A DNA stretch of 64,000 nucleotides from Klebsormidium nitens (GCA_000708835.1 DF237453.1:1-64000); one strand, 5' to 3'. Positions 11,001 to 22,960 are shown, counted from the first letter of the stretch. Numbers and translations: made by a program. Notes: generated by a model from the sequence alone, not told the origin.

Positions 11001-12821
11001 TACCAATCCTTCCGTGTATTCAGCCGTCGGATTTTTTTAAAAGGAAGTAAGGACCTCGGCTGGATTGATGTACTTTTGGAAATGTGATTCATGTGTGTCG
11101 TAATGCACGGAGCAGGGCTAACAGCAAAGTGGATTGATCTCATTTCACATGAATGATCGATTGAGCCTTCTCCCTGTCCATGCAGGTTGTCCTAGCTTTT
11201 ACAAATGGCCGATCTCGGCAGAGGGTGGCGTTACTATACTCCAATACTTATACTTGGGTCGAAGCAGCAACCATGGCAGCGTCTACGTTTCTCGTCGGAG
11301 ATTCTAGGAGATAAAAGAGATCAAGACGACGTTCCTCGTCCGATATTCTACGAGATGATTAAAGAGACTGGATACGTCAGGGTCCGGAGCTTGGCACCCT
11401 TCGCAACCCAGATAACATCTCGTCTTCGATTTCGTTACGAGGATTGATCCTAGGCATATAACTAAGTTGTCACATGTATCACTGACATCATGTTTCTTGC
11501 TGTCGAATTGATAGCTCGTCATGAGCAGATGCATCAAACTAATAGCAGGCTCCTACCTTAGCGAGTCAGCGTTCAAATTGTATCGTGTTGCACCCCCGGT
11601 CAATTTGTTGCGCCCTGAGGCCCCCCCGAGTCTGGCCGGCCATTGAAGCACTCGATGGAAGTATCTGTTATGCATCATGTTTGCATCCCTGTTCGTGTGC
11701 AACTTACAAGTCGCCGCTGTCTGCAAATGTCCAAATTTTGGAAGGCATGGTCAGAAGGCTCGCGCACTCAGTCATGAGTGTCTATCGCGAACCTTGATTC
11801 GCGCTGCCCGCTTCAGTGCACGTCGTGTGCAGCATGGGCCAGTTGTTGCATGGTTGTGCAATGTAGCAAGCGCGATGCAGATCAGCCGCCTCGAGTAGTC
11901 CTTGGTGTGCGAACAAAGGACGTACCAGACTCAAAATCCGTACTAAGAGCGTGCATGATCGCATGATTAGAAGCGTTTTCCTTCAAGACTACGCCGAAGG
12001 GCCTGTGAGGGCTACAGTGCTCGCCGCCAGCTATGCTAGCTGGCAGGCCGGGCTGGCATTACCCATCAGCCGGGCCGCGCCCCCTCACGTCGGCGCCTGT
12101 AGAAACGCGGGCGGCCGCGGCGTTTACGTTAGCTACTGTATGACGTGGCGCCAAAAGATATCAAAGTTGCATTCACTTCTTGCCAATCGGGTCCGATTGT
12201 TTCCAGAGTTCAGGAATATACTAAGAGGCATTGCTCTAGTTTGGCTTTTGCTAGCTAGATGGCACCCGGTTCTTTTGCCAAGTTTTGGGAAGATTCACAG
12301 GACGTGAAGACAAGAGATCATGGTCATATCAGCCAGCTCCGAAGTCAAGTGCTAGCTGACGACCTCAGCGCCGTCCTTGGTGGCTCATAGAAGGTGCATT
12401 CACAGTGTGGTGGTGTATGTTTTGCGGCGCTATATAGAAGTGGAGAAGTGGAAACCCCAGGGTCTGCTTTCTCAAGTAAGGCTGTAGGTTGAGCTTGTTC
12501 TTTTCTTGTGATACCCTTGTGAGAATGGGTTTTGAATACTGATCCGTTGGCGCCCTGTTCTGATTGCTTGCTGACAGAAACTTCTTTTCTTTCTGGCTCG
12601 CATTCGGATCTACCACCATCGGAGGTCTATCTGTATACATACATTTTCTTAAGGGGTACATGCAACTGCAGCGGGGTTCAAATCTAGAAAGCATCCTGAC
12701 TCTTAGAAACCAATATGACATTGTTTTAAGCCCCGTGACATCAAATCACGGCAGCATTGTTCGTAGTGGGAAGTGTGACTAGACAATTGCACTCAACGGT
12801 GCAGATCAAGACCACGGCGCC

Positions 12822-15800
12822 ATGGATCTTCTTGCAACGGACGATCATATTGCAGCCCTCTCGCCTCTTGAGCTCGTAAATTGGGTGGTGGAACTGAGCT
12901 CTGGAGGTGGGTGACATTTGCTACCACTGTTTGAGCTATCGTTTGCTCCTTCAGCAGACTGCGCACTCTGAACTTGCTACTCTATGTAATCTGTGTCAGC
13001 CACTGGCGGCGCATTGAAAGCTCGTTTGTCAAGCTGATTCCACGTTGATCACGTGCCTTCCGCAGTAACGTCGACAGCAGCCTGTAAAAATCTGTTGAGC
13101 TTTTGTGCAGATGTGGTCTGTGCAGTTGAACACTCTTGCAAATCTTATGCAACTTTCAGATTGGAGCATCACATGACAGTTGAAAAGGAAACCAACCTCA
13201 GTTGGACCAATCAATCAGCTTCATAATGATCCAACGTCTCATCTTCCACAAGCCAACAGCTGACTGTTACTTTGTTGACACCAGGCGATGGCCGGAAGCC
13301 TGTCAAGCACACCGCCCTTCTCAAGCTGGTGTCAAACGCGCTCGCGCTTTCCCCCGACCACGACCCCTACCGCCATTCCCTGGCCTGTTTCAAGTCTCTC
13401 GGCGGGGGCCAGTTCTCACCCGCGCAGCAGAACAGCATGGGCCACCTGCTCCTAGCTGCAATTGACCAGTGTAAACAGGCCCCAACCTTCTCCCACGTTG
13501 ACCTAGCTCCCTCTAGAAACGAGGCTGCTGCTCTGGTGTCGTCCGTCTTCGAGGGGGTTTTCACACTAGAAAGCCGGCTGGTGGTCCGGGTGGCCGCCGC
13601 CTTCGGTGTGAAAAGCCCCGACCTCGGGGACTCAGGGAGAGCCGCAGCGGGCCAGTTTACGAAGAAACTAGTTGCGGATAAAAACTTTGCGGCGGGGATG
13701 GGGCTTGCGCAGCAGCTCGACTTGGGGCCGGAACTAGGGGCGGCGCTTTTGTTGCAGATGTTAGACATGGGGGCGGCGCAGGCTGCGGTCGATTGGGCGA
13801 AGCCATACGGAAAAGAAGTGGGGGCGCGGATAGTGAGGGAACTTGCGGCGAGAGGGGACCATAAGACGGCGTGGCAGATGATTGAGAAGCTGGGAATGCA
13901 GGCCGAGTTTCCAGGGGCGTATATTGCCTACAGGTGAGGATATGGTTTTGACTCTGGCAAGAACGAAAAGAGGGAAGCGACAGTCAGTTTCCAGTGAAGG
14001 AAAGTTCGCTGGTGTAAACAAACGTCGATATTTCTGGTCTTGTGAACTGTAGATGTGAGGGAAACGGGCTCATGCATCCGCGCTTCACTTTTATCTTGGT
14101 GAAGGCAGGGTAAATGATTACAACGATTTCACAGGTATCATTGTCAAACATCTCAAACCCATCCGTGCAAAAAATCTGGGTAACTTTTCTTCTTCAAGAG
14201 CTGTAGTGCAGGTCCAAGAGGGAGAAAAAGATGGCTTTCTGTTGGTCTGCTTGGAAATAGCGTAATCAGTTGAAAGACATTCAACTTCACAATCATCTGG
14301 CGCTTCAACAGAATAATCTGTGTGCATATCAGTCAGTCTGCACGTTGAGGACCGGCTATAAGTCGCTTCAAAGCTTGTGGAAGCTGCCATAGAAAAGTGG
14401 TCGCTTCTCTTTGTCCAGACGATGGTGTGGATCTCAGATGAAAACTTCGACGATCAGCATTCTATCCTCGAGAACGACTCACTTGGCAAACCCTCAAGGA
14501 CCTGTTGGAAGGTTGCTTCTTTCCCTGTTTCGGAACCCATGTTTACCTTCCGCCCCTGTTGGCCCAAACGTCTCTCTCGCAAAGCAATCAGATCGCCTAC
14601 TGGTCGGCCGATATGTCGAACCAACGCATTGTATCAGTCAGCTTATCATGTCCTTTGCTTCGTGAGCTTCTAAGCCGGTATGTCTCGCTTCCCCTCCAGG
14701 AAAACGTCCATCACGAAGCTTGCCAAGAAAGGGGTCTGGGACGTGGCCCGCTCCCTCGCTGAAGAGGACCCGATTCTCAAAGAGCACCTCGTGGAGGCCG
14801 CCATCATCGAAGAAGAGTTCGCCCACGCCGTCGAGTTTGCCGAGCGGTTCGGCCTTGACCACCTCTTAACCGAGGAGGTTGTCTCCGCGTCCGGGCTGCC
14901 AACGCAGACCGACTGCCTAACCCTACCGATCCCTCCTAACCGCGTTTTCTTCGTCGATAACCCGGAGGGTTTAGCGCGGGCTGAAAATGAGATCTGTGCC
15001 TCGGACTTAGTGGGGATCGACTGCGAATGGAAGGCGGACTCAGTTCGGGGGGCGGTCCCAAACCGGGTTGCGTTGCTCCAGCTGGCGACACGTGGCGGCG
15101 CGTGGTTGGTCGACCTGATAACTCTCAGCCAATCCTCCCCCGAAGCTCTAGAGTCTTTCCTCTCCTCGTTCCTTCCCAACGAAAACATCCTGAAACTCGG
15201 GTTTGCGGTCAACGGTGACCTGGACCGAATCTCCAAAACTCACCCCGCAATCCGGGGGGCGCTCCGAAACTGCGGCCCGCTTCTAGACGTCGCCGGGTTA
15301 GCAAACCTGCGGGGAGTTAGAACCAGGTCCTTGAGCGGAATCTGCGGAGTCTGCATCGGAAAGCCGCTTTCTAAACGGGTGCGGATGAGCAACTGGGAGG
15401 AGCGGCCCCTAAGCGAGGCGCAGACGCAGTATGCTGCTCTCGACGCGCTGTGCCTGATTCCGCTCTTCGATCTGCTTACCAACCCGGACTTTCGGGTGCC
15501 AGAGAGAACCGCGTACAGCCAGGCAGCTGATGGGGGGATTGCAACGGTAGAGGAGCCGGGAACGGCGGAAGCTAGCTTTAGAGTCGAGAATGCAGATGAG
15601 TCGGCGGTTGAGGGAGCGACTGGTGATCTGGCTTTGGGCCGAAAAGGAGGGGATCCTGAAACTTTCGAGGGGCTGAGCGAAACCAACGGAGCAGCGCTTA
15701 TAGAGCCTGGATCAGGGCTAGATAGAGAGTTGCAAAGTGAGTTAGAAAGCGGGTTGAGTAGAGATGTAGACAGTGAGAGGTCAGACAAAGGTATAGATGG

Positions 15801-16876
15801 AGGAGAAAACGGTCGACTACAGGAAAACGAGGCGGCCGGAGGGTCAGGCTCTGACGCAACAACCGAGCTGCTTGCGTCAGCAACCGGTACTCTGGAAATG
15901 GTTGGCCCCTCTCTTTCGTCAATGGCGGAATCTCTCTCAGCTTCCCTTGCCGCGCCGGTTAGAAACGAAGACGGGTCCTCGGTTAGTAACTCCGGACGGA
16001 AGCCTCAAAAGCCGTGGCAGAGTTTAGTGTACTTCTACGGGGCCAGGATCGACACGGGGAGGGGCAACAAGCGACGGGAGAAGCGAAAAGGAATGGCAAC
16101 CGAGCGTTTGGAGAAAGCTGATCTACAAGGGCCGCAGTTCTCGGAGAACGGTGCTCTAAGCTCAGGCGGACCGCAGATTGCCGAACCAAAGGCAGAGTAC
16201 TCACTTTTGGCGGGTGAGAAACTAGAGGCGGGAGTCGCTGCGGCGGTCGAAAAGCCGCAGGCGTCAGAGAAGGGAAAGGGGACGTGTGAAAGGAGCAAGT
16301 GGAGCGGGCTGGGGCTTCCCGAGAGAGTCGCGGAGGCGCTTCAGAAAGGAGGGGTGGCGCCCCCGCAGGTTTTAGTGTGCTGGGAGGGAGGGGAAACGGT
16401 GGGGAGAGATAGTGAAAAAGCGGAGGTTGGTGGAGCTGGTAGGGCTGACGTGGATGCGACCGAAGACAACGGGAGTTTGGACGTGAAGGCGGAAGTTGAA
16501 GGGGAGCCATCGAGCTCGCATGTGGGTGTGAGTCCGGTCGATGGGGCCAGCGGGATCCGGCCGGAGCATACGGAGGTGGACGGAAACGGAAGTGGGAGCG
16601 GAAACGGAAGCGGAAGAGAGGTTGAGGATGGAACGGTGAGGGGGGATGAGGACGAGGAGACTCGGGCGCTCGAAGCCTGGCGAGCCGCGAAATTGGCAGC
16701 GGCAGGGGAGCGAAAGGTAGGTCAAGAGGGAAGAGGCTCGGGAACTAGGAGTGGGGAGGAAAGTGGTGGTGTTAGCGAACGGGTGACTGGGAGCGAGGGG
16801 GAGGAGGCCAGTGGACACGTGGCGACGCGCGAGCGGCCAGCGTGGCAGGTGCGATGCATACCTGTGCTGATCTCGG
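12822..16876 (+). CDS. Plant MUT-7/EXD3/Nibbler-type DEDDy 3'-5' exonuclease (Arabidopsis At1g56310-like); exons 12822-12906, 13285-13933, 14700-16876
   Basis: ATG in GCGCCATGG context; GT-AG introns with phases 1 and 2 consistent. Helical N-terminal region ...EFPGAYIAYRKTSITKLAKKGVWDVA matches the plant family as recalled. ExoI GIDCEW, ExoII LGFAVNGDL and ExoIII YAALDA are intact, followed by RMSNWEERPLS and a long acidic Gly/Ser-rich tract. Confidence 0.92.
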
Positions 16877-17345
16877 GTGAGAAACAGCGCAGGGAAGTCT
16901 CAGATGTGCACGCTACTTCTGTCCTGTGGTTGGAGCGTAATCAGTGGGACTCTTGAAGTTCAGACCTTGCAGTGTGACTGCTTCTGCGTCCTCTTATCTT
17001 CCTCTTTCTTATTTGTGACCAGATATGTTATTTCTTGAAAAGTTCTTATCTTCCACTCTAGCGGTTGAGTGGATCACGACTGAACTAAACGACACTTGAA
17101 ACACGAGCATAGGATCCGGAGGAGCGGCCATCGACCTTGTGAGGACTTCCCTGTGAGAAACATTCCTAGCCGCAGCAACTTCTGCTGAGGAGCGTTCGAC
17201 TGATCAGTCCTAGCCTTTTGGCTTCGCTCGCACGGAAGCAGTCCATGATGTCCAACATGGTCAGCAGCTTCGAAAATTTCAGACGTTCTACCCAACATGG
17301 GCGACATCTGATCAAAACCTCGACTGAGTATTTTCATTGTTACAG

Positions 17346-18830
17346 TGCTAGAAGCCGCCGTGACCAGTCGTCCGGCCGCAGTGAACTCTTCGGAGAGCGG
17401 AGTCGAAGCTGACTCGCCGGAGCTTCCCACGCCGCTCGTTCATCCGCCCAAGAAGCTTAGACGTGAGCGCCAAACTGTTGCAGTGTTATTTGCAAAGCTC
17501 AGAGTCTTTCCCGTTTAGCTAGTCCGAAGCGCTCGTTAAAATCTGGACGGCGTTCCCCTGAGAGAGGAGCAAGCGAACGCGACCCAAGGGGCTGCAAAGC
17601 CTGTGGCCTTATAGAATCCAGCGACAACAAATTACACATATTAGTCAATTTTGACAGATTCTCGGATTTTCTGCATCTGTGCTGACCGGTCACTGTCGTT
17701 AGCGGCTTTGTAAGACTGAGCTTAGAATGCAATTGTAGAAACAGTTTTCCGCCTATTACTCGACAGGGTCTTACAGTTTTGACTCGCGGTGTTGCGCCTT
17801 TTTCCCGGCTCAACCACGTGACAACTTGCTTGACCTATGTAGACATCTGCCTCCCATCCTTATACGTTACTGGTATCTTCCTTTCGAACTTATCAAGTGC
17901 TAGGGCAACGTTAGTGTGGACTGTTAGCGGCTCGCCTATGCGACCAGGTAGTCTGTTGAAGCTCTTTCACTCCAGATTCAGGACAAAAACAATACGTCCA
18001 TCTCTATGACCAATGAGAAATTGCACAACGGAGTTTGTCAGGCTAAGGGGATCCCTCTTCTCGAATGCAGTAAGGCCTGTTGTGCTTCTCATCGGCGAGG
18101 GGCGAACCCCTGATCTCCAGGTTGTCATTAAACACCTGGGCATGCCCGGAAAGTGAGAAAGCAACCCCTATTGTGCTCCCCTCTTTTCGTTCCTCTTTCT
18201 CTGCTCTCTCGTTTCTGCGTGCGACGCTTTCGGGTAGATAAGTTACCTATTGATTAAGGTATGCAAGTGTCCCGCAGTTCATGAGAGGAAGTGTGCCGAC
18301 TGGCATGCCGCCCTTGCCTGCGCATGGCATCTGTCTGTCGCCGTTTTCCCTCGTGCCCAAAGTCGATCGTACTTGCACGCTTCTTTCCGCAAACGACGAA
18401 GGTCGTTTGAAAAGGCTGCCGAGTCAGAGCGTCTGCAGTGATGTGCCTGGTTACTGTAGCAAAAGATTCAATCGCATTCCTGCCTTCCCAAGTACGCCAC
18501 GTATAAAATCTTAAGTAAAGAATCCTGTTCCCGGAGCAGTAACGTTCGGCCACGTAGCAATTGCTGCTGAAGAGAAACACCTAAACTCTTTGTTGTTCCT
18601 CGCAGACTGGCTTGGATCGCCGACGACCACGAGTGTCTGACCTACTTCGGCTACCCCCCCGCGCTGCTCCCCCCGACCGGCCACGTGAAAAGAGCGCTTC
18701 TAGCTTTCGACAGCAAGCTGAGATCACAGCTCGGAAAAGCGGGGGCCCGGGTTGTGACCGCTTCCGGCAGAGAGGGGGTCTCTCTCGCCTGGGAAATAGG
18801 CCCCCTGGTCCGGTCAACTGGGGCCATTTC
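17346..18830 (+). CDS. YbaK/aminoacyl-tRNA-editing (ProX/INS)-like domain exons, probably the same gene as the exonuclease; exons 17346-17462, 18071-18152, 18606-
   Basis: Phase-consistent GT-AG splicing gives ...RPVVLLIGEGRTPDLQVVIKHLGMPGK|LAWIADDHECLTYFGYPPALLPPTGHVKRALLAFDSKLRSQLGKAGARVVTASG. This matches the C-terminal half of YbaK (VLVL..G...D...LG...LA...E...GY..G..PP.GH...vD..L...V..aG). Confidence 0.68.
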
Positions 18831-20454
18831 GCGGGACTTTGCAATCAAGGAGGCAGTTGGGCTGGAGGGCCGAACGGAAGAGAGTGGGGAGCGGAAGAGC
18901 GGAACGGAAGAGGGTGGGGAGCATGAGAGCGGAATGGAAGAGAGTGGGCGGGCGGAAAGCGACCGTGATGGAACTAGCGGAGAGGAGACAGCGGAAACCG
19001 GCGAGATCGTGGGGGCTGCATCCTTTGACAACGGTGCGTTGGAAAATAGAACGGCCGAGGAGGATGGGAGCAATTTGCGAGCAAACGAGCAGGGGTCCGA
19101 CGATGGAGCGAGGCGAAGCGGAAATCTTCAGGGGGGCGCAGTTTCCGGCGGAGTTGGGACGGAAAAGGGCGGAGCTTCACCGGAAGGCGGGAGCGGAGAC
19201 GGCGGTGATTCTGGGAAAGCCGAAAATCGAAAGCGCGTTGGCGCAGGGGAATGTTTAGGGTTGCCGCCACCCGACCAAGCGTTCGATTTGAACGGGCCAA
19301 CGGATGTGAACGGGGTCGACGTAACTGCAGTGAACCATTCAGGGGGATCCCTCTCCGCGGGCTGTGAGGAGGTTGCGACGTGGGATGAAGTGGGCCGGAG
19401 TGCGTCGGGAGGGGAAAACGCGGGGACTGCGTCCGTGAGGAGGGGTGCGGAAAGTGCGTCCGGAGGGGGGGGTGCAAAAAGTGCGTCCGGAGGGGGGGGT
19501 GCCGAGACTGTGTCCGGAAGGGGGTTGCGGAAAATGCGACTGGAGGGGGGGCTGCCGAGGAGGCTGTGTTTCGACAGAGGTTTGCAGAGACTACGTTTGG
19601 AAGGAAGGTTGCAAAACGTGCGTCCGAAGGGAGGGGTGTCGAGGCTGCGTCTAGGGGGCGGTTTGCCGAGAGTGCTTCCGGAGGGGTGACTGAGAGTGCC
19701 TCTGAAGGGGGGGTGACCGAGACTGCGTCTATAGAGGGGGTTGCCGAGACTGCTGCTGGAGGGGGGGGTCGCCACACTGCGGTTGGAGGGGGGACGGAAA
19801 GACGTGCCGCAGGTCTGGTGGGCTCCCTAAGAGCTGACGGAGGCGTACTGGCTGTGAGGTTTCATCGACCAAGTTGGGAAACCGAAACCATTCTAGAACT
19901 CCCTTTAGAACCCTGGTACAGCCCCCCCAGCAAAGTAGAGCAGCTTGTCAGGGTCGCCGAAGATCCAGCGGGATGTGTGACCTGTGAGCAAGTGGGGGGG
20001 TCCGAACACGGGTCCGCCGTGCCCCCCAGAACGTTCAGGAAACGAAAACCGCGTCCCCCGAAAAAGAGCCCCCTGGCAGGAACGGGTCGGTTCGTTGGGC
20101 TGGGCACGAGAAAGGAGCTAGAGACGCTGGTTGCAGTGCTCGGGGGATCATCCCGGGGATCGCGTGGCGTGAGCAACGGGCTGGGGGAAACTAGAGTGGT
20201 GCGAGAAACAGCCGCTCCGGAAAAGCGGTCGGGGTACGATCCCCGGTCGTCGTTTCGGGAGGCGTGGGCTGCGGAAGCGGAGAGAAAGCGGCCATTTTGG
20301 GCGGGGTGGTTTTCCGGCGCGCAAACGTCCGCCCGGTACGAACCACCGGGGGCGATTCGCCCGCCTTGGAGGGAGCCGGTTGGTCAGTCACCGGTCGGTG
20401 GTTTTGGTTGGTTGACTGACAAGGAGTTACACCCTGCGGACAACCCTTGTGCTG
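18831..20454 (+). CDS. C-terminal continuation of the same exon: low-complexity region, minisatellite, then an unknown module; contains a 1-nt frameshift near 19520-19524
   Basis: ORFs 18685-19689 and 19566-20462 overlap in different frames. Adding one G to the G5 run at 19520-19524 joins them and restores the repeat reading (AETVSGRGV-AENATGGGA). Possible donor G|GTAGGT at 20455. Confidence 0.55.
19445..19800 (+). repeat. Coding minisatellite, ~27-nt unit x ~13 (AESASGGGG-like)
   Basis: Repeated GCCGAGA(C/G)TG(C/T)GTC(C/T)GGAGGGGG-like units encode AESASGGGG, AKSASGGGG, AETVSGRGV, TESASEGGV, AETAAGGGG and similar. Confidence 0.85.
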
Positions 20455-20879
20455 GTAGGTAGCGTGCAAACACCCGGTCGTCAGCACGTCGACCTACCAG
20501 ATGAGGTTGGATTTTTCGAGAGTTCGCTCCGCGCCTATTATCAGCGTGTAAAACTTATACGGCTCACTTGTCTTCGCAAAGGGCACCAGGCCCATGTTAT
20601 GTCACGAGAAGTAGTTTTTGGTATTAGTCCAGTCCAAGTACGCATCCTTGAGAAGAGCCGTGATCGAGCCCGTCCGCCGACCCCTTTATTGCTGTGTCCC
20701 CATCTCTTCCCTCCACTCATACCATTTTTGTTACTATCACCCAACATTCGTCATTCGTGGCGACCTTCTCCTTAGATATGTTCTTGGAATTCTCAAAAAG
20801 CCGCCCACGTCAGCTCGTCCTTCGCTGGGATTCTCGTCCACTTGTGTCCGTAGATGTTAAATTGTGGTGACCATAACCC

Positions 20880-21250
20880 CCGGCTTTAGAGTCCCCAACT
20901 CACGTCCTTCTTGAATCAAACTTGGGTCCATATTCTGATTAGCGCCATGTTTCGAATGCAGGTATGGCAGCACAACGCGACGAAGTTCTCGGTGTGCCTC
21001 CAAGCGCTCGCCTGGCCCGCTCAGCCGGAGTCTCGAGGCCCTGTTTGAGGACACACCATATGATACGGGACGGATTATGCCCAGGTAAGGAATCTGACCT
21101 CGTAAACAAGGCCTCTCTTCTGACGCCATGTGTCATTGTCCCATCTTCCAAGAACTCCTACTGTTCAAGGAGTTCGGAAATCTATTCAATAATTGCTGCC
21201 ATGATAGCATCCTCAAACGCGAACCAAGCTGTTTCTACAAGCGCCTAATC
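20880..21250 (-). pseudogene. Decayed coding remnant of unknown family
   Basis: Protein-like reading (ALVETAWFAFEDAIMAAIIE*ISELLEQ*EFLEDG; ERLEAHRELRRVVLPYLHSKHG) is interrupted by TAG stops and a frame change. Confidence 0.3.
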
Positions 21251-22960
21251 GTTGATCCTTAAATGCACCCATTCATCAAATCATACCTTTCGCAGGTTTT
21301 GCTCTCCGGCCGACCTTTTTGGGTGGAGCGTTGAAAGCCAACCCTTCGACGGGTGTCGTGCGGATGAGATGGGCCGCAAAGGTCTGCCTAGGATGTTAGG
21401 CCAGTTCCTGTCCGCCCCTCAGGCTCCCAAAACCTTCACTGGACGCCTAATTGAACATCGGATAACTTTGTCGAGCCTGCCACCCCGTTCCATTCCTTTC
21501 CGTGTTTGTATGAAAGCTTTGGTATGTCAACCCCTCGCCCCACGAAGGGAGAGCACAAATGCATTCCCGAGGTCGCCGGTCGAGATTGTGCTTGATTGGT
21601 CAATCCTTCGACAGTCGACTCAGCCGACATGATCGTGTTCGAGTGCGCGATAGCCTTTGAAGCAGAGTGATACTGACAGCTATTGCAAATCACATGGCAA
21701 TGATGTGGACCTCCGCCCATGCATGCACTCTGGTTATACATGTATGCCAAGATTCGTCGATATTGCGCACTGGTACCGTAATCAAACGGCGCGACCTGAT
21801 TGCCCGGCTGGCTCTGGCCTGCGGACGCATACGCAGTGGCCCGACACTGCGCGAGACCAGCATATGTCATGCGTCAGGTTACCTTCGATTATATGTAGAT
21901 AAAGTGAGCCGCGCCCCAGCGACGCGCGCAGCGCACTGACATGGCGGCTTGGATATCGACTTGATCATGATGTCGATCACGCGGATATACGATGTATCAA
22001 TTAATCAATGTGCTGCATGGCCGCGGCGCGCATGGCAACTTGGCAACGACCAACTATGGATGGCGGGCCGTACTGTTGCTTGCTAAGCACCGGCCAGCAA
22101 TTACTGCGTCAGGTACGTCGCGTATGTCGTAGTTAATCCTATTCAACGCACGTATACCGGCGGCGTATACAGAACTGCTCGCCGGTGGTGTTGGCGCATG
22201 CAGCTGCGCGGCTGCATGCCTGTACGTGACCGTCGCAACATGCGACTTGCTGGCACGGGACCGCTGCCGCAACTTGGCAATGATTCAAATGCGATATGCC
22301 ACCTTTGCCAGCATGCAGCGCGCGCGAGGATAACGACTCAGAGTTAATCAGATTGGCCAAATTGAGTTGTATACATCATAATTCGCACATTGAGTCACCG
22401 TGTCTAATTGTCCCGGAGTGAGTCCGTTTTATTGTACGTCGACTAACTTGGAACGGATTGCTCATGCAAGATCAGCGACTAAGACAGTCTACTGGTGCTC
22501 GGGAGAGGGGAACCGGTCTGTCTGCTACAGGCTTCGAGTCCACGCTGTCATGCAGCGTACGTCGCCCAAAGCGTGAATGCAGCACGTTACCCTCCTTCAA
22601 GTAGAAGTCACGGTGAAGAGGCAGGCTTCCAATATTAACGTGGCGAGGTACACGCACTTCTCAATCATGCAGTATGCTTGCGCGTGATTTCTATGTTGCA
22701 AGTTGCAAAATCTGCATGCCGTACGTTTAGGCAACTCCGGCCCTAGCCCAGTGTTGCGATTCACGAAAAAGACTAGACCTGGCCACAATCCGTTGAAGCC
22801 TGGGGACTGCTGCGCTTTCGACCGTTCCTCAATGCTTCTTTTTGAGCCCATCGCCTCGTTTCACAGACTTTGCACAGCGTCTGGCCCGTTTGACTCTATC
22901 GTTAACTTGGTATGCTACCGTTGAAATTTAGTGTTGGACTAATTGAGAAGGGGGTAAAGC

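What the first reader, a model, noticed from the sequence alone, without database searches (positions are those of the whole stretch)
12822..18830. MUT-7/Nibbler-type small-RNA exonuclease apparently fused to a YbaK tRNA-editing-like domain
Seen: a continuous phase-consistent GT-AG path (donor 16877, exons 17346-17462, 18071-18152, 18606-) links an intact DEDDy exonuclease to a segment matching the C-terminal half of YbaK. Inference: the N-terminal YbaK elements may lie inside exon 3, split by low-complexity inserts (PERVAEALQKGGV; WQVRCI for the conserved VKSL, which would replace the key Lys with Arg). Established: MUT-7/Nibbler/EXD3 proteins trim small-RNA 3' ends, and YbaK/ProX domains bind the tRNA 3' acceptor end and deacylate mischarged tRNA. 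The Arabidopsis homologue as I recall it ends shortly after the nuclease. The fusion would suggest an exonuclease that reads (aminoacyl-)tRNA or tRNA-like 3' ends.
Basis: partly seen in the sequence, partly recalled or inferred. Interest (0 to 1): 0.75.

Follow-up and report, generated by a model that had tools for sequence, protein, structure and literature searches.

The report
RNA-trimming nuclease with YbaK-like domain
A green alga's gene for a MUT-7/Nibbler-type enzyme that trims RNA ends seems to carry, further along the same spliced gene, a diverged piece of the YbaK fold that normally grips the charged end of tRNA; five related genomes keep the join, but no transcript confirms it and only about two thirds of the fold can be matched.

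Summary
The exonuclease is real and intact. Pfam PF01612 matches at E 4e-19, the best solved relative is "Exonuclease mut-7 homolog" (7jw2), and the DEDDy residues are present. An N-terminal exon is homologous to the N-terminal domain of streptophyte MUT-7-like proteins.

Its splice sites and phases are the same in four further related loci (L001, L002, L003, L005). Ka/Ks of the downstream exons (0.08-0.27) is like that of the nuclease domain. No other conserved exon or start codon lies between them.

Exons 5 and 6 resemble YbaK residues about 59-157 of 159. Pfam tRNA_edit is the only family hit for exon 6 alone (E 6.7e-4 to 0.15, below threshold). hhalign places exon 5 at YbaK 59-80 (P 0.001, 0 of 200 shuffles) and exon 6 at 91-157 (P 0.05), in order.

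The proposed N-terminal YbaK elements inside exon 3 are conserved islands, but they do not align significantly. The family's invariant Lys and Gly-Gly are not recovered.

Most likely this is one gene: a MUT-7-family exonuclease whose usual C-terminal RNA-binding arm is replaced by a probably non-catalytic YbaK-like domain. No transcript evidence was available. The joined protein was neither searched nor folded, by instruction.

The parts
12822..12906 (+). Exon 1 (tentative): start codon ATG at 12822, donor GT at 12907
   Evidence: Sequence read; weak conservation with L002 and L003; phases counted.
13285..13933 (+). Exon 2: N-terminal helical domain of MUT-7-like proteins
   Evidence: BLASTP to residues 39-266 of the transcript-derived protein P0004, E 4e-19. 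64-80% identical in L001-L003. AG/GT sites.
14700..16876 (+). Exon 3: DEDDy 3'-5' exonuclease domain (about 14950-15490), then a low-complexity stretch with conserved islands, ending at the donor G|GTGAG
   Evidence: PF01612 E 4e-19; PDB 7jw2 E 4.2e-19; alignment A1; donor kept in all five loci.
16300..16392 (+). Conserved island WxGLGLPERVAxxLxxG....PQVL, inside exon 3
   Evidence: 16 invariant columns in five loci. AF2 gives a helix at pLDDT about 80. No significant match to YbaK.
16654..16698 (+). Conserved island EExRALExWRAxK, inside exon 3
   Evidence: AF2 gives a helix at pLDDT about 82.
16816..16875 (+). Conserved island HVA..RPAWQVRCIPVLIS at the very end of exon 3
   Evidence: No significant match to the YbaK Lys strand.
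17346..17462 (+). Exon 4: 39 codons, phase 1 at both ends, no Met, ends in the basic cluster PPKKLRR (looks like a nuclear localisation signal)
   Evidence: The basic cluster is kept in all five loci.
18071..18152 (+). Exon 5: aligns to YbaK residues 59-80 (strand, then the helix ending ...LG)
   Evidence: hhalign P 0.001; 0 of 200 shuffles reach the score; Ka/Ks 0.08-0.11; splice sites kept.
18606..18852 (+). First 82 codons of exon 6: align to YbaK residues about 87-157
   Evidence: PF04073 is the only Pfam hit, up to 20.2 bits, profile positions 61-122 of 123. hhalign P 0.03-0.055; 10 of 200 shuffles. Ka/Ks 0.13-0.27.
18853..20454 (+). Rest of exon 6: Gly/Glu/Ser-rich repeats, then a conserved C-terminal block (KSPLAGTGRFVGL..RKELETL.., SSFREAWAAEAERKRPFW). 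The frame breaks near 19514-19530
   Evidence: No Pfam family.
20962..21084 (+). Exon 7 (tentative): conserved, phase 1 at both ends
   Evidence: AG and GT kept in L003 and L005.
21296..21399 (+). Exon 8 (tentative): last exon, ends ...VCLGC then the stop codon TAG
   Evidence: Conserved with L003.

Best explanation
The stretch 12822 to about 21399 is one spliced gene of about eight exons in a streptophyte green alga. Earlier notes of this scan call the genome Klebsormidium-type. The gene encodes a large MUT-7/Nibbler/EXD3-family protein with these parts, in order:
- a helical N-terminal domain;
- an intact DEDDy 3'-5' exoribonuclease domain;
- a long disordered linker with short conserved islands;
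- a small exon with a basic cluster that looks like a nuclear localisation signal;
- a diverged YbaK/tRNA_edit-like domain, of which the last two thirds are recognisable in exons 5 and 6;
- more low-complexity sequence and a conserved C-terminal tail of unknown kind.

Shown: the domains, the conserved splice path, and purifying selection on the exons.

Inferred mechanism: the exonuclease trims single-stranded RNA 3' ends, as Nibbler, MUT-7 and EXD3 do. The YbaK-like domain takes the place that MUT7-C holds in animal homologues and that a dsRBD holds in some streptophyte homologues. There it would act as a second RNA-holding arm. Given the fold's usual job, its preferred target would be a 3' A76/CCA-type end (tRNA, tRNA fragments or tRNA-like ends). 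Because the superfamily's invariant Lys and the Gly-Gly of the GYxxGG motif are not recovered, I take the domain to bind and not to deacylate.
For: Nuclease:
- PF01612 E 4e-19; PDB MUT-7 homologue E 4.2e-19; DEDDy motifs present.
- The N-terminal exon is homologous to the N-terminal domain of the contiguous, transcript-derived protein P0004.

One gene:
- Donor, acceptors and phases are identical in five loci, although intron lengths differ.
- The split Lys codon AA|A or AA|G at the exon 5/6 join is kept in all five.
- Conservation drops within a few bases after the donor at 16877 in the distant loci.
- There is no Met in exon 4, only one near the end of exon 5, and no further conserved block between 16900 and 18050.
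- The flanks outside the gene are not conserved, while the whole block is.
- Ka/Ks of exons 5-6 (0.08-0.27) is like that of the nuclease domain (0.07-0.17).

YbaK likeness:
- tRNA_edit is the only Pfam family hit for exon 6 in four of five orthologues, best E 6.7e-4, covering profile positions 61-122 of 123.
- Exon 5 aligns to YbaK 59-80 (P 0.001) and exon 6 to 91-157 (P 0.05), in order and adjacent.

Variable arm:
- Relatives P0007-P0009 have a dsRBD after the nuclease and P0004 has nothing.
Against: - There is no transcript or junction evidence. No spliced protein of this gene exists in either protein collection.
- Every YbaK score is below family thresholds.
- A profile of exon 6 found no YbaK among 1.8 billion proteins or among PDB sequences.
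- AF2 of exon 6 alone was unusable, pLDDT 42.
- The first third of the fold, with the invariant Lys, could not be located.
- As assembled, exon 6 has a frame break near 19514-19530 that would end the protein at 19689.
- The binding role and its target are pure inference.
Confidence: 0.55

Rival explanations
1. There are two neighbouring genes. The exonuclease gene ends by read-through at the stop at 16956. Exons 17346 onward belong to a separate downstream gene for a YbaK-like protein, kept next to it by conserved gene order.
For: There is no transcript evidence for the 16876/17346 junction. Prokaryote-style gene calls on the relatives end the nuclease ORF just after the donor. The N-terminal YbaK elements could not be shown inside exon 3.
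Against: - Exon 4 has no Met, and no other conserved exon lies in 16900-18050.
- The donor G|GTGAG sits directly after a 14-residue invariant island and is identical in five loci, with conservation ending there.
- All phases match in all loci.
- A separate product would start in the middle of the YbaK fold.
- The flanking genes are not syntenic, while this block is.
Confidence: 0.15
2. It is one gene, but the YbaK resemblance of exons 5-6 is chance. They would encode an unrelated, lineage-specific conserved domain.
For: - All scores are sub-threshold: at most 20.2 bits against a cut-off of 25.5.
- Exon 6's hhalign P is only 0.05, with 10 of 200 shuffles reaching it.
- L005's exon 6 gives no Pfam hit.
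- The PDB and representative searches returned only noise, such as WD-repeat proteins on the motif VTASGKEGVTLAWEI.
- The invariant Lys and the Gly-Gly are missing.
Against: - Among 24,736 Pfam families, tRNA_edit is the sole hit in four orthologues, always at the same profile positions.
- Two separate exons align independently to adjacent, ordered parts of YbaK.
- Exon 5 beat all 200 shuffles.
- Several family-conserved positions are kept: G97, Y98, P105, K110 as K or R, G131, G134, and the DL...LG helix.
Confidence: 0.2
3. The YbaK-like domain is an active aminoacyl-tRNA deacylase. The protein would couple deacylation to 3'-end trimming of tRNA or tRNA-like RNAs.
For: The fold family deacylates mischarged tRNA and binds A76 (PMC10164551). 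The domain is under purifying selection.
Against: - The invariant G101-G102 of the YbaK alignment are Ala-Leu here, in all five loci.
Confidence: 0.08

Closest known systems
MUT-7 / Nibbler / EXD3 family of 3'-5' exoribonucleases (C. elegans MUT-7, Drosophila Nibbler, human EXD3)
   Same: A helical N-terminal domain followed by a DEDDy exonuclease domain. The best solved-structure hit is 'Exonuclease mut-7 homolog'. An accessory domain follows the nuclease.
   Different: No MUT7-C domain (PF01927) was found anywhere in the gene. A YbaK-like segment, very long low-complexity inserts and an unknown conserved C-terminal tail stand in its place. The predicted protein is roughly twice as long.
Streptophyte MUT-7-like proteins P0004 (N-terminal domain + nuclease) and P0007-P0009 (N-terminal domain + nuclease + dsRBD)
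   Same: Both the N-terminal domain and the nuclease domain are homologous, at 37-39% identity in the nuclease.
   Different: They end soon after the nuclease or carry a double-stranded-RNA-binding motif. None has a tRNA_edit-like part.
YbaK / ProXp-ala / ProRS INS superfamily (Pfam tRNA_edit, PF04073), free-standing or synthetase-borne aminoacyl-tRNA deacylases
   Same: Exons 5-6 align in order to YbaK residues about 59-157. They keep G97, Y98, P105, K110 (as K or R), G131 and G134.
   Different: It is fused to an exonuclease and not to a synthetase. The scores are sub-threshold. The first third of the fold cannot be located. The invariant Lys and G101-G102 are not recovered. The domain is split by introns, and probably by large inserts.

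Membership tests
MUT-7/Nibbler/EXD3 exoribonucleases | DEDDy 3'-5' exonuclease domain (PF01612 / IPR002562) with its catalytic Asp, Glu, Asp, Tyr and Asp | tested here: met
   PF01612 at 69.5 bits against a cut-off of 23.6. D114 and E116 in IDCEW, D180 in NGDLD, Y251 and D255 in YAALDA.
MUT-7/Nibbler/EXD3 exoribonucleases | Closer to MUT-7 homologues than to other DEDDy nucleases (WRN, EXD2, RNase D) | tested here: met
   PDB ranking: 7jw2 'Exonuclease mut-7 homolog' E 4.2e-19, against WRN 4e-11 and EXD2 2.8e-8. No phylogeny was made.
MUT-7/Nibbler/EXD3 exoribonucleases | Helical N-terminal domain upstream of the nuclease | tested here: inconclusive
   It is homologous to the N-terminal part of streptophyte MUT-7-like P0004, E 4e-19. 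There was no sequence hit to any solved structure, and the fold was not modelled.
MUT-7/Nibbler/EXD3 exoribonucleases | MUT7-C domain (PF01927) after the nuclease. Most animal members have it; it was lost in drosophilids (PMC11347159). | tested here: not met
   No PF01927 hit in any exon translation. This feature is not obligatory for the family.
MUT-7/Nibbler/EXD3 exoribonucleases | Mn/Mg-dependent trimming of single-stranded RNA 3' ends | not testable with these tools
   Needs a biochemical assay.
YbaK/INS superfamily (PF04073 tRNA_edit) | Match to the family profile above Pfam's gathering score | tested here: not met
Exon 6 alone scores 12.6-20.2 bits against 25.5.
YbaK/INS superfamily (PF04073 tRNA_edit) | Ordered alignment over the domain | tested here: inconclusive
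   The last two thirds align in order: exon 5 to residues 59-80 (P 0.001) and exon 6 to 91-157 (P 0.05). The first third does not align.
YbaK/INS superfamily (PF04073 tRNA_edit) | Strictly conserved Lys (K46 in YbaK, K45 in ProXp-ala) that contacts the C75-A76 phosphate (PMC10164551) | tested here: inconclusive
No significant alignment of that strand was obtained.
YbaK/INS superfamily (PF04073 tRNA_edit) | GYxxGGxSPxG loop (G97, Y98, G101 and G102 invariant, P105 nearly invariant, in the YbaK alignment A4) | tested here: not met
   The sequence here is FGYPPALLPPTG. G97, Y98 and P105 are kept, while G101-G102 are Ala-Leu in all five loci.
YbaK/INS superfamily (PF04073 tRNA_edit) | YbaK fold by structure | not testable with these tools
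   Folding needs the joined exons, and that step was left out by instruction. Exon 6 alone gave pLDDT 42. The tail of exon 3 alone gave pLDDT 47.

The most novel reading that the evidence does not exclude
A nuclear MUT-7-family exonuclease has recruited a tRNA-acceptor-end-binding fold. This would let it pick out tRNAs, tRNA fragments or aminoacylatable tRNA-like 3' ends (for example of viral RNAs) for trimming, perhaps telling charged ends from uncharged ones. That would link small-RNA 3'-end processing to tRNA charging status, a link not described before.
Probability: 0.12. Interest if true: 0.8.

Novelty: new variant of a known kind. Interest (0 to 1): 0.55.

Why it matters
Accessory domains beside the nuclease set what MUT-7-family exonucleases bind (PMC11347159). 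A member whose accessory arm comes from the tRNA-editing fold would be a natural experiment in retargeting a small-RNA trimmer. It would also be a case of a YbaK-type domain reused outside translation quality control. I found no paper holding both terms. No protein with this pairing appeared among the hits of the searches run.

The case is limited to a narrow algal clade. It rests on a gene model without transcripts and on a sub-threshold domain match. It is therefore a good lead and not a result.

Tried and rejected
- A profile of exon 6 against PDB sequences gave only noise, such as WD-repeat proteins.
- The same profile against 1.84 billion representatives gave only ORF fragments of the same clade plus one unrelated repeat protein, P0019.
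- The ESM Atlas on exon 6 gave nothing above 0.83.
- AF2 of exon 6 alone (pLDDT 42) and of the exon 3 tail (pLDDT 47, only two helices) gave models too poor for a fold search.
- A metagenome scan with the exon 6 alignment found no relative.
- A genome-contig scan for YbaK returned only near-identical enterobacterial genes, useless for a profile. I replaced it with 13 diverse plasmid-borne YbaK genes.
- A word search on the tail of exon 3 found no spliced or transcript-derived protein.
- Pfam, an HMM of YbaK residues 1-58, and hhalign on the conserved islands of exon 3 gave nothing significant.
- Rfam on 12000-22000 found nothing.
- Pfam on the conserved C-terminal block in four loci found nothing.
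- A WD40 reading of VTASGKEGVTLAWEI was rejected: it is a single 15-residue motif and has no Pfam WD40 hit.


Full report
**What is there.**

The window is GC-rich, intron-bearing eukaryotic DNA. Earlier notes of this scan call the genome a Klebsormidium-type streptophyte alga. I did not test that, but the nearest annotated relatives of the nuclease are streptophyte proteins.

ORF 14680-16956 (758 aa) has one Pfam domain, DNA_pol_A_exo1 (PF01612), at E 4e-19. Its best solved relative is 7jw2, 'Exonuclease mut-7 homolog', at E 4.2e-19, ahead of WRN and EXD2. The DEDDy residues are present in IDCEW, NGDLD and YAALDA.

The upstream ORF 13272-13937 is homologous (E 4e-19) to residues 39-266 of P0004. 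P0004 is a transcript-derived protein in which that N-terminal domain and the nuclease are contiguous. So the MUT-7/Nibbler-type assignment holds.

**Relatives.**

The nuclease ORF has close relatives on four other assemblies:
- L003, from a Logan assembly, 86% identical in the nuclease part;
- L001 and L002, from one JGI metagenome, 68% identical;
- L005, with its twin L006, reached through the downstream ORF.

These are genomic contigs with prokaryote-style gene calls, so their 'proteins' stop at introns.

**The splice path.**

- donor G|GTGAG at 16877;
- exon 17346-17462, 117 nt, phase 1 at both ends;
- exon 18071-18152;
- exon 18606 onward.

Every site is AG/GT and the frame is continuous.

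In all five loci the donor after ...PVLIS is the same. The acceptor and donor of exon 5 and the acceptor of exon 6 are in the same places and phases. The Lys codon split across the exon 5/6 join is AA|A or AA|G in every locus, although that intron is 453 nt here and about 1.8 kb in L001.

Protein-level and DNA-level conservation coincide with these exons. In the more distant loci conservation stops a few bases past the donor at 16877. Exon 4 has no Met, and no other conserved block lies between 16900 and 18050.

Ka/Ks is 0.08-0.11 for exon 5 and 0.13-0.27 for the first 82 codons of exon 6, against 0.07-0.17 for the nuclease domain. Outside about 12800-21400 there is no conservation with L001-L003.

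All this favours one gene. None of it is transcript evidence. No spliced product of this gene is in either protein collection.

**The YbaK resemblance.**

The joined exons were not searched, scored or folded.

For the first 82 residues of exon 6, Pfam tRNA_edit (PF04073) is the only family reported:
- in the window, E 0.1, 13 bits;
- in L001, E 6.7e-4, 20.2 bits, profile positions 61-122 of 123;
- in L002, E 1.9e-3;
- in L003, E 0.15.

L005 gave no hit. All scores are below the gathering score of 25.5.

I built a 14-sequence YbaK alignment from E. coli ybaK and 13 diverse plasmid-borne homologues, 32-62% identical. hhalign places exon 5 at YbaK 59-80 with P 0.001; no column shuffle out of 200 reached that score. 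It places exon 6 at 91-157 with P 0.05; 10 of 200 shuffles reached it. Reversed sequences score at background.

The two exons thus map independently to adjacent, ordered parts of one 159-residue protein. Family-conserved positions G97, Y98, P105, K110 (as K or R), G131 and G134 are kept.

Against this, a profile of exon 6 found no YbaK in PDB sequences or among 1.84 billion representatives. The language-model atlas gave nothing. AF2 on exon 6 alone was unusable.

I put the odds that exons 5-6 are truly YbaK-derived at about four in five.

**The N-terminal third.**

These residues do lie in sharply conserved islands within otherwise fast-evolving low-complexity sequence: 16300-16392, 16654-16698 and 16816-16875, plus 16000-16041. 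AF2 gives confident helices for two of them.

But Pfam sees nothing there in any locus. An HMM of YbaK residues 1-58 gives nothing. hhalign scores are no better than shuffles. hhalign's preferred, non-significant, placement of the first island is YbaK 25-54, the second helix plus the Lys strand, not the first helix. That would put a hydrophobic residue or a gap at the Lys.

So the islands are good candidates for the missing strands and helices. Their assignment is open, and this argument for the fusion is not established.

**Catalytic state.**

[quoted passage not shown] It is not recovered here under either placement. The invariant G101-G102 are Ala-Leu in all five loci. An active deacylase is therefore unlikely. 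A binding role is the more economical reading.

**Mechanism proposed (inferred).**

In MUT-7 and EXD3 the C-terminal MUT7-C domain adds to RNA binding, as the second arm of a 'forceps' (PMC11347159). In this streptophyte subfamily the C-terminal arm varies: none in P0004, a dsRBD in P0007-P0009. No MUT7-C is present here.

I propose that the YbaK-like domain is the accessory arm in this clade, perhaps biasing the nuclease to A76/CCA-type 3' ends. The conserved basic cluster at the end of exon 4, and a second one before the C-terminal block, suggest a nuclear protein.

**Gene extent.**

Exon 6 extends to a donor at 20455. A conserved exon follows at 20962-21084, and a short last exon ends at 21399.

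As assembled, exon 6 changes frame by one base in a G-rich tandem repeat near 19514-19530. The relatives are open there. This could be a homopolymer assembly error or a real truncation at 19689. It lies after the YbaK-like part and does not affect the finding.

**Verdict.**

Noticed in passing
window 19514-19530 (within exon 6): There is a one-base frame break in a G-rich tandem repeat. The frame from 18607 stops at 19687-19689, while the conserved C-terminal block is in the frame of ORF 19566-20462. L001, L002, L003 and L005 have a single open frame there. It may be an assembly error or a real truncation.
   Followed up: partly
window 20455-21399: The gene appears to continue beyond the ORF stop at 20462. 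There is a donor G|GTAGGT at 20455, then a conserved exon 20962-21084 with its AG and GT kept in L003 and L005, then a short last exon of about 21296-21399 ending ...VCLGC* (L003 ends ...VSLGC*).
   Followed up: partly
window 19977-20454: A conserved C-terminal block (KSPLAGTGRFVGL..RKELETL..SRG.R.VS.GLGG; SSFREAWAAEAERKRPFW) is present in all five loci. It has no Pfam family, and its function is unknown.
   Followed up: partly
window 17447-17462 (end of exon 4) and about 20090-20130: There are two conserved basic clusters: PPKKLRR, and RKRKPRPPKK just before the C-terminal block. They resemble nuclear localisation signals. The first lies on a 39-codon exon with phase 1 at both ends, which could be skipped without changing the frame.
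   Followed up: no
proteins P0007-P0009: More distant streptophyte MUT-7-like proteins carry a double-stranded-RNA-binding motif (PF00035) after the nuclease. That is another variant of the C-terminal arm.
   Followed up: partly
protein P0005 (Adiantum nelumboides): A fern protein model joins a reverse transcriptase domain (PF00078) to a MUT-7-like nuclease. It is probably a gene-model merger with a retroelement.
   Followed up: no
L001 and L002 (JGI sample 3300060284): Two versions of the whole locus occur in one metagenome sample, each 68% identical to the window in the nuclease part. They could be two related algae, two haplotypes, or paralogues.
   Followed up: no
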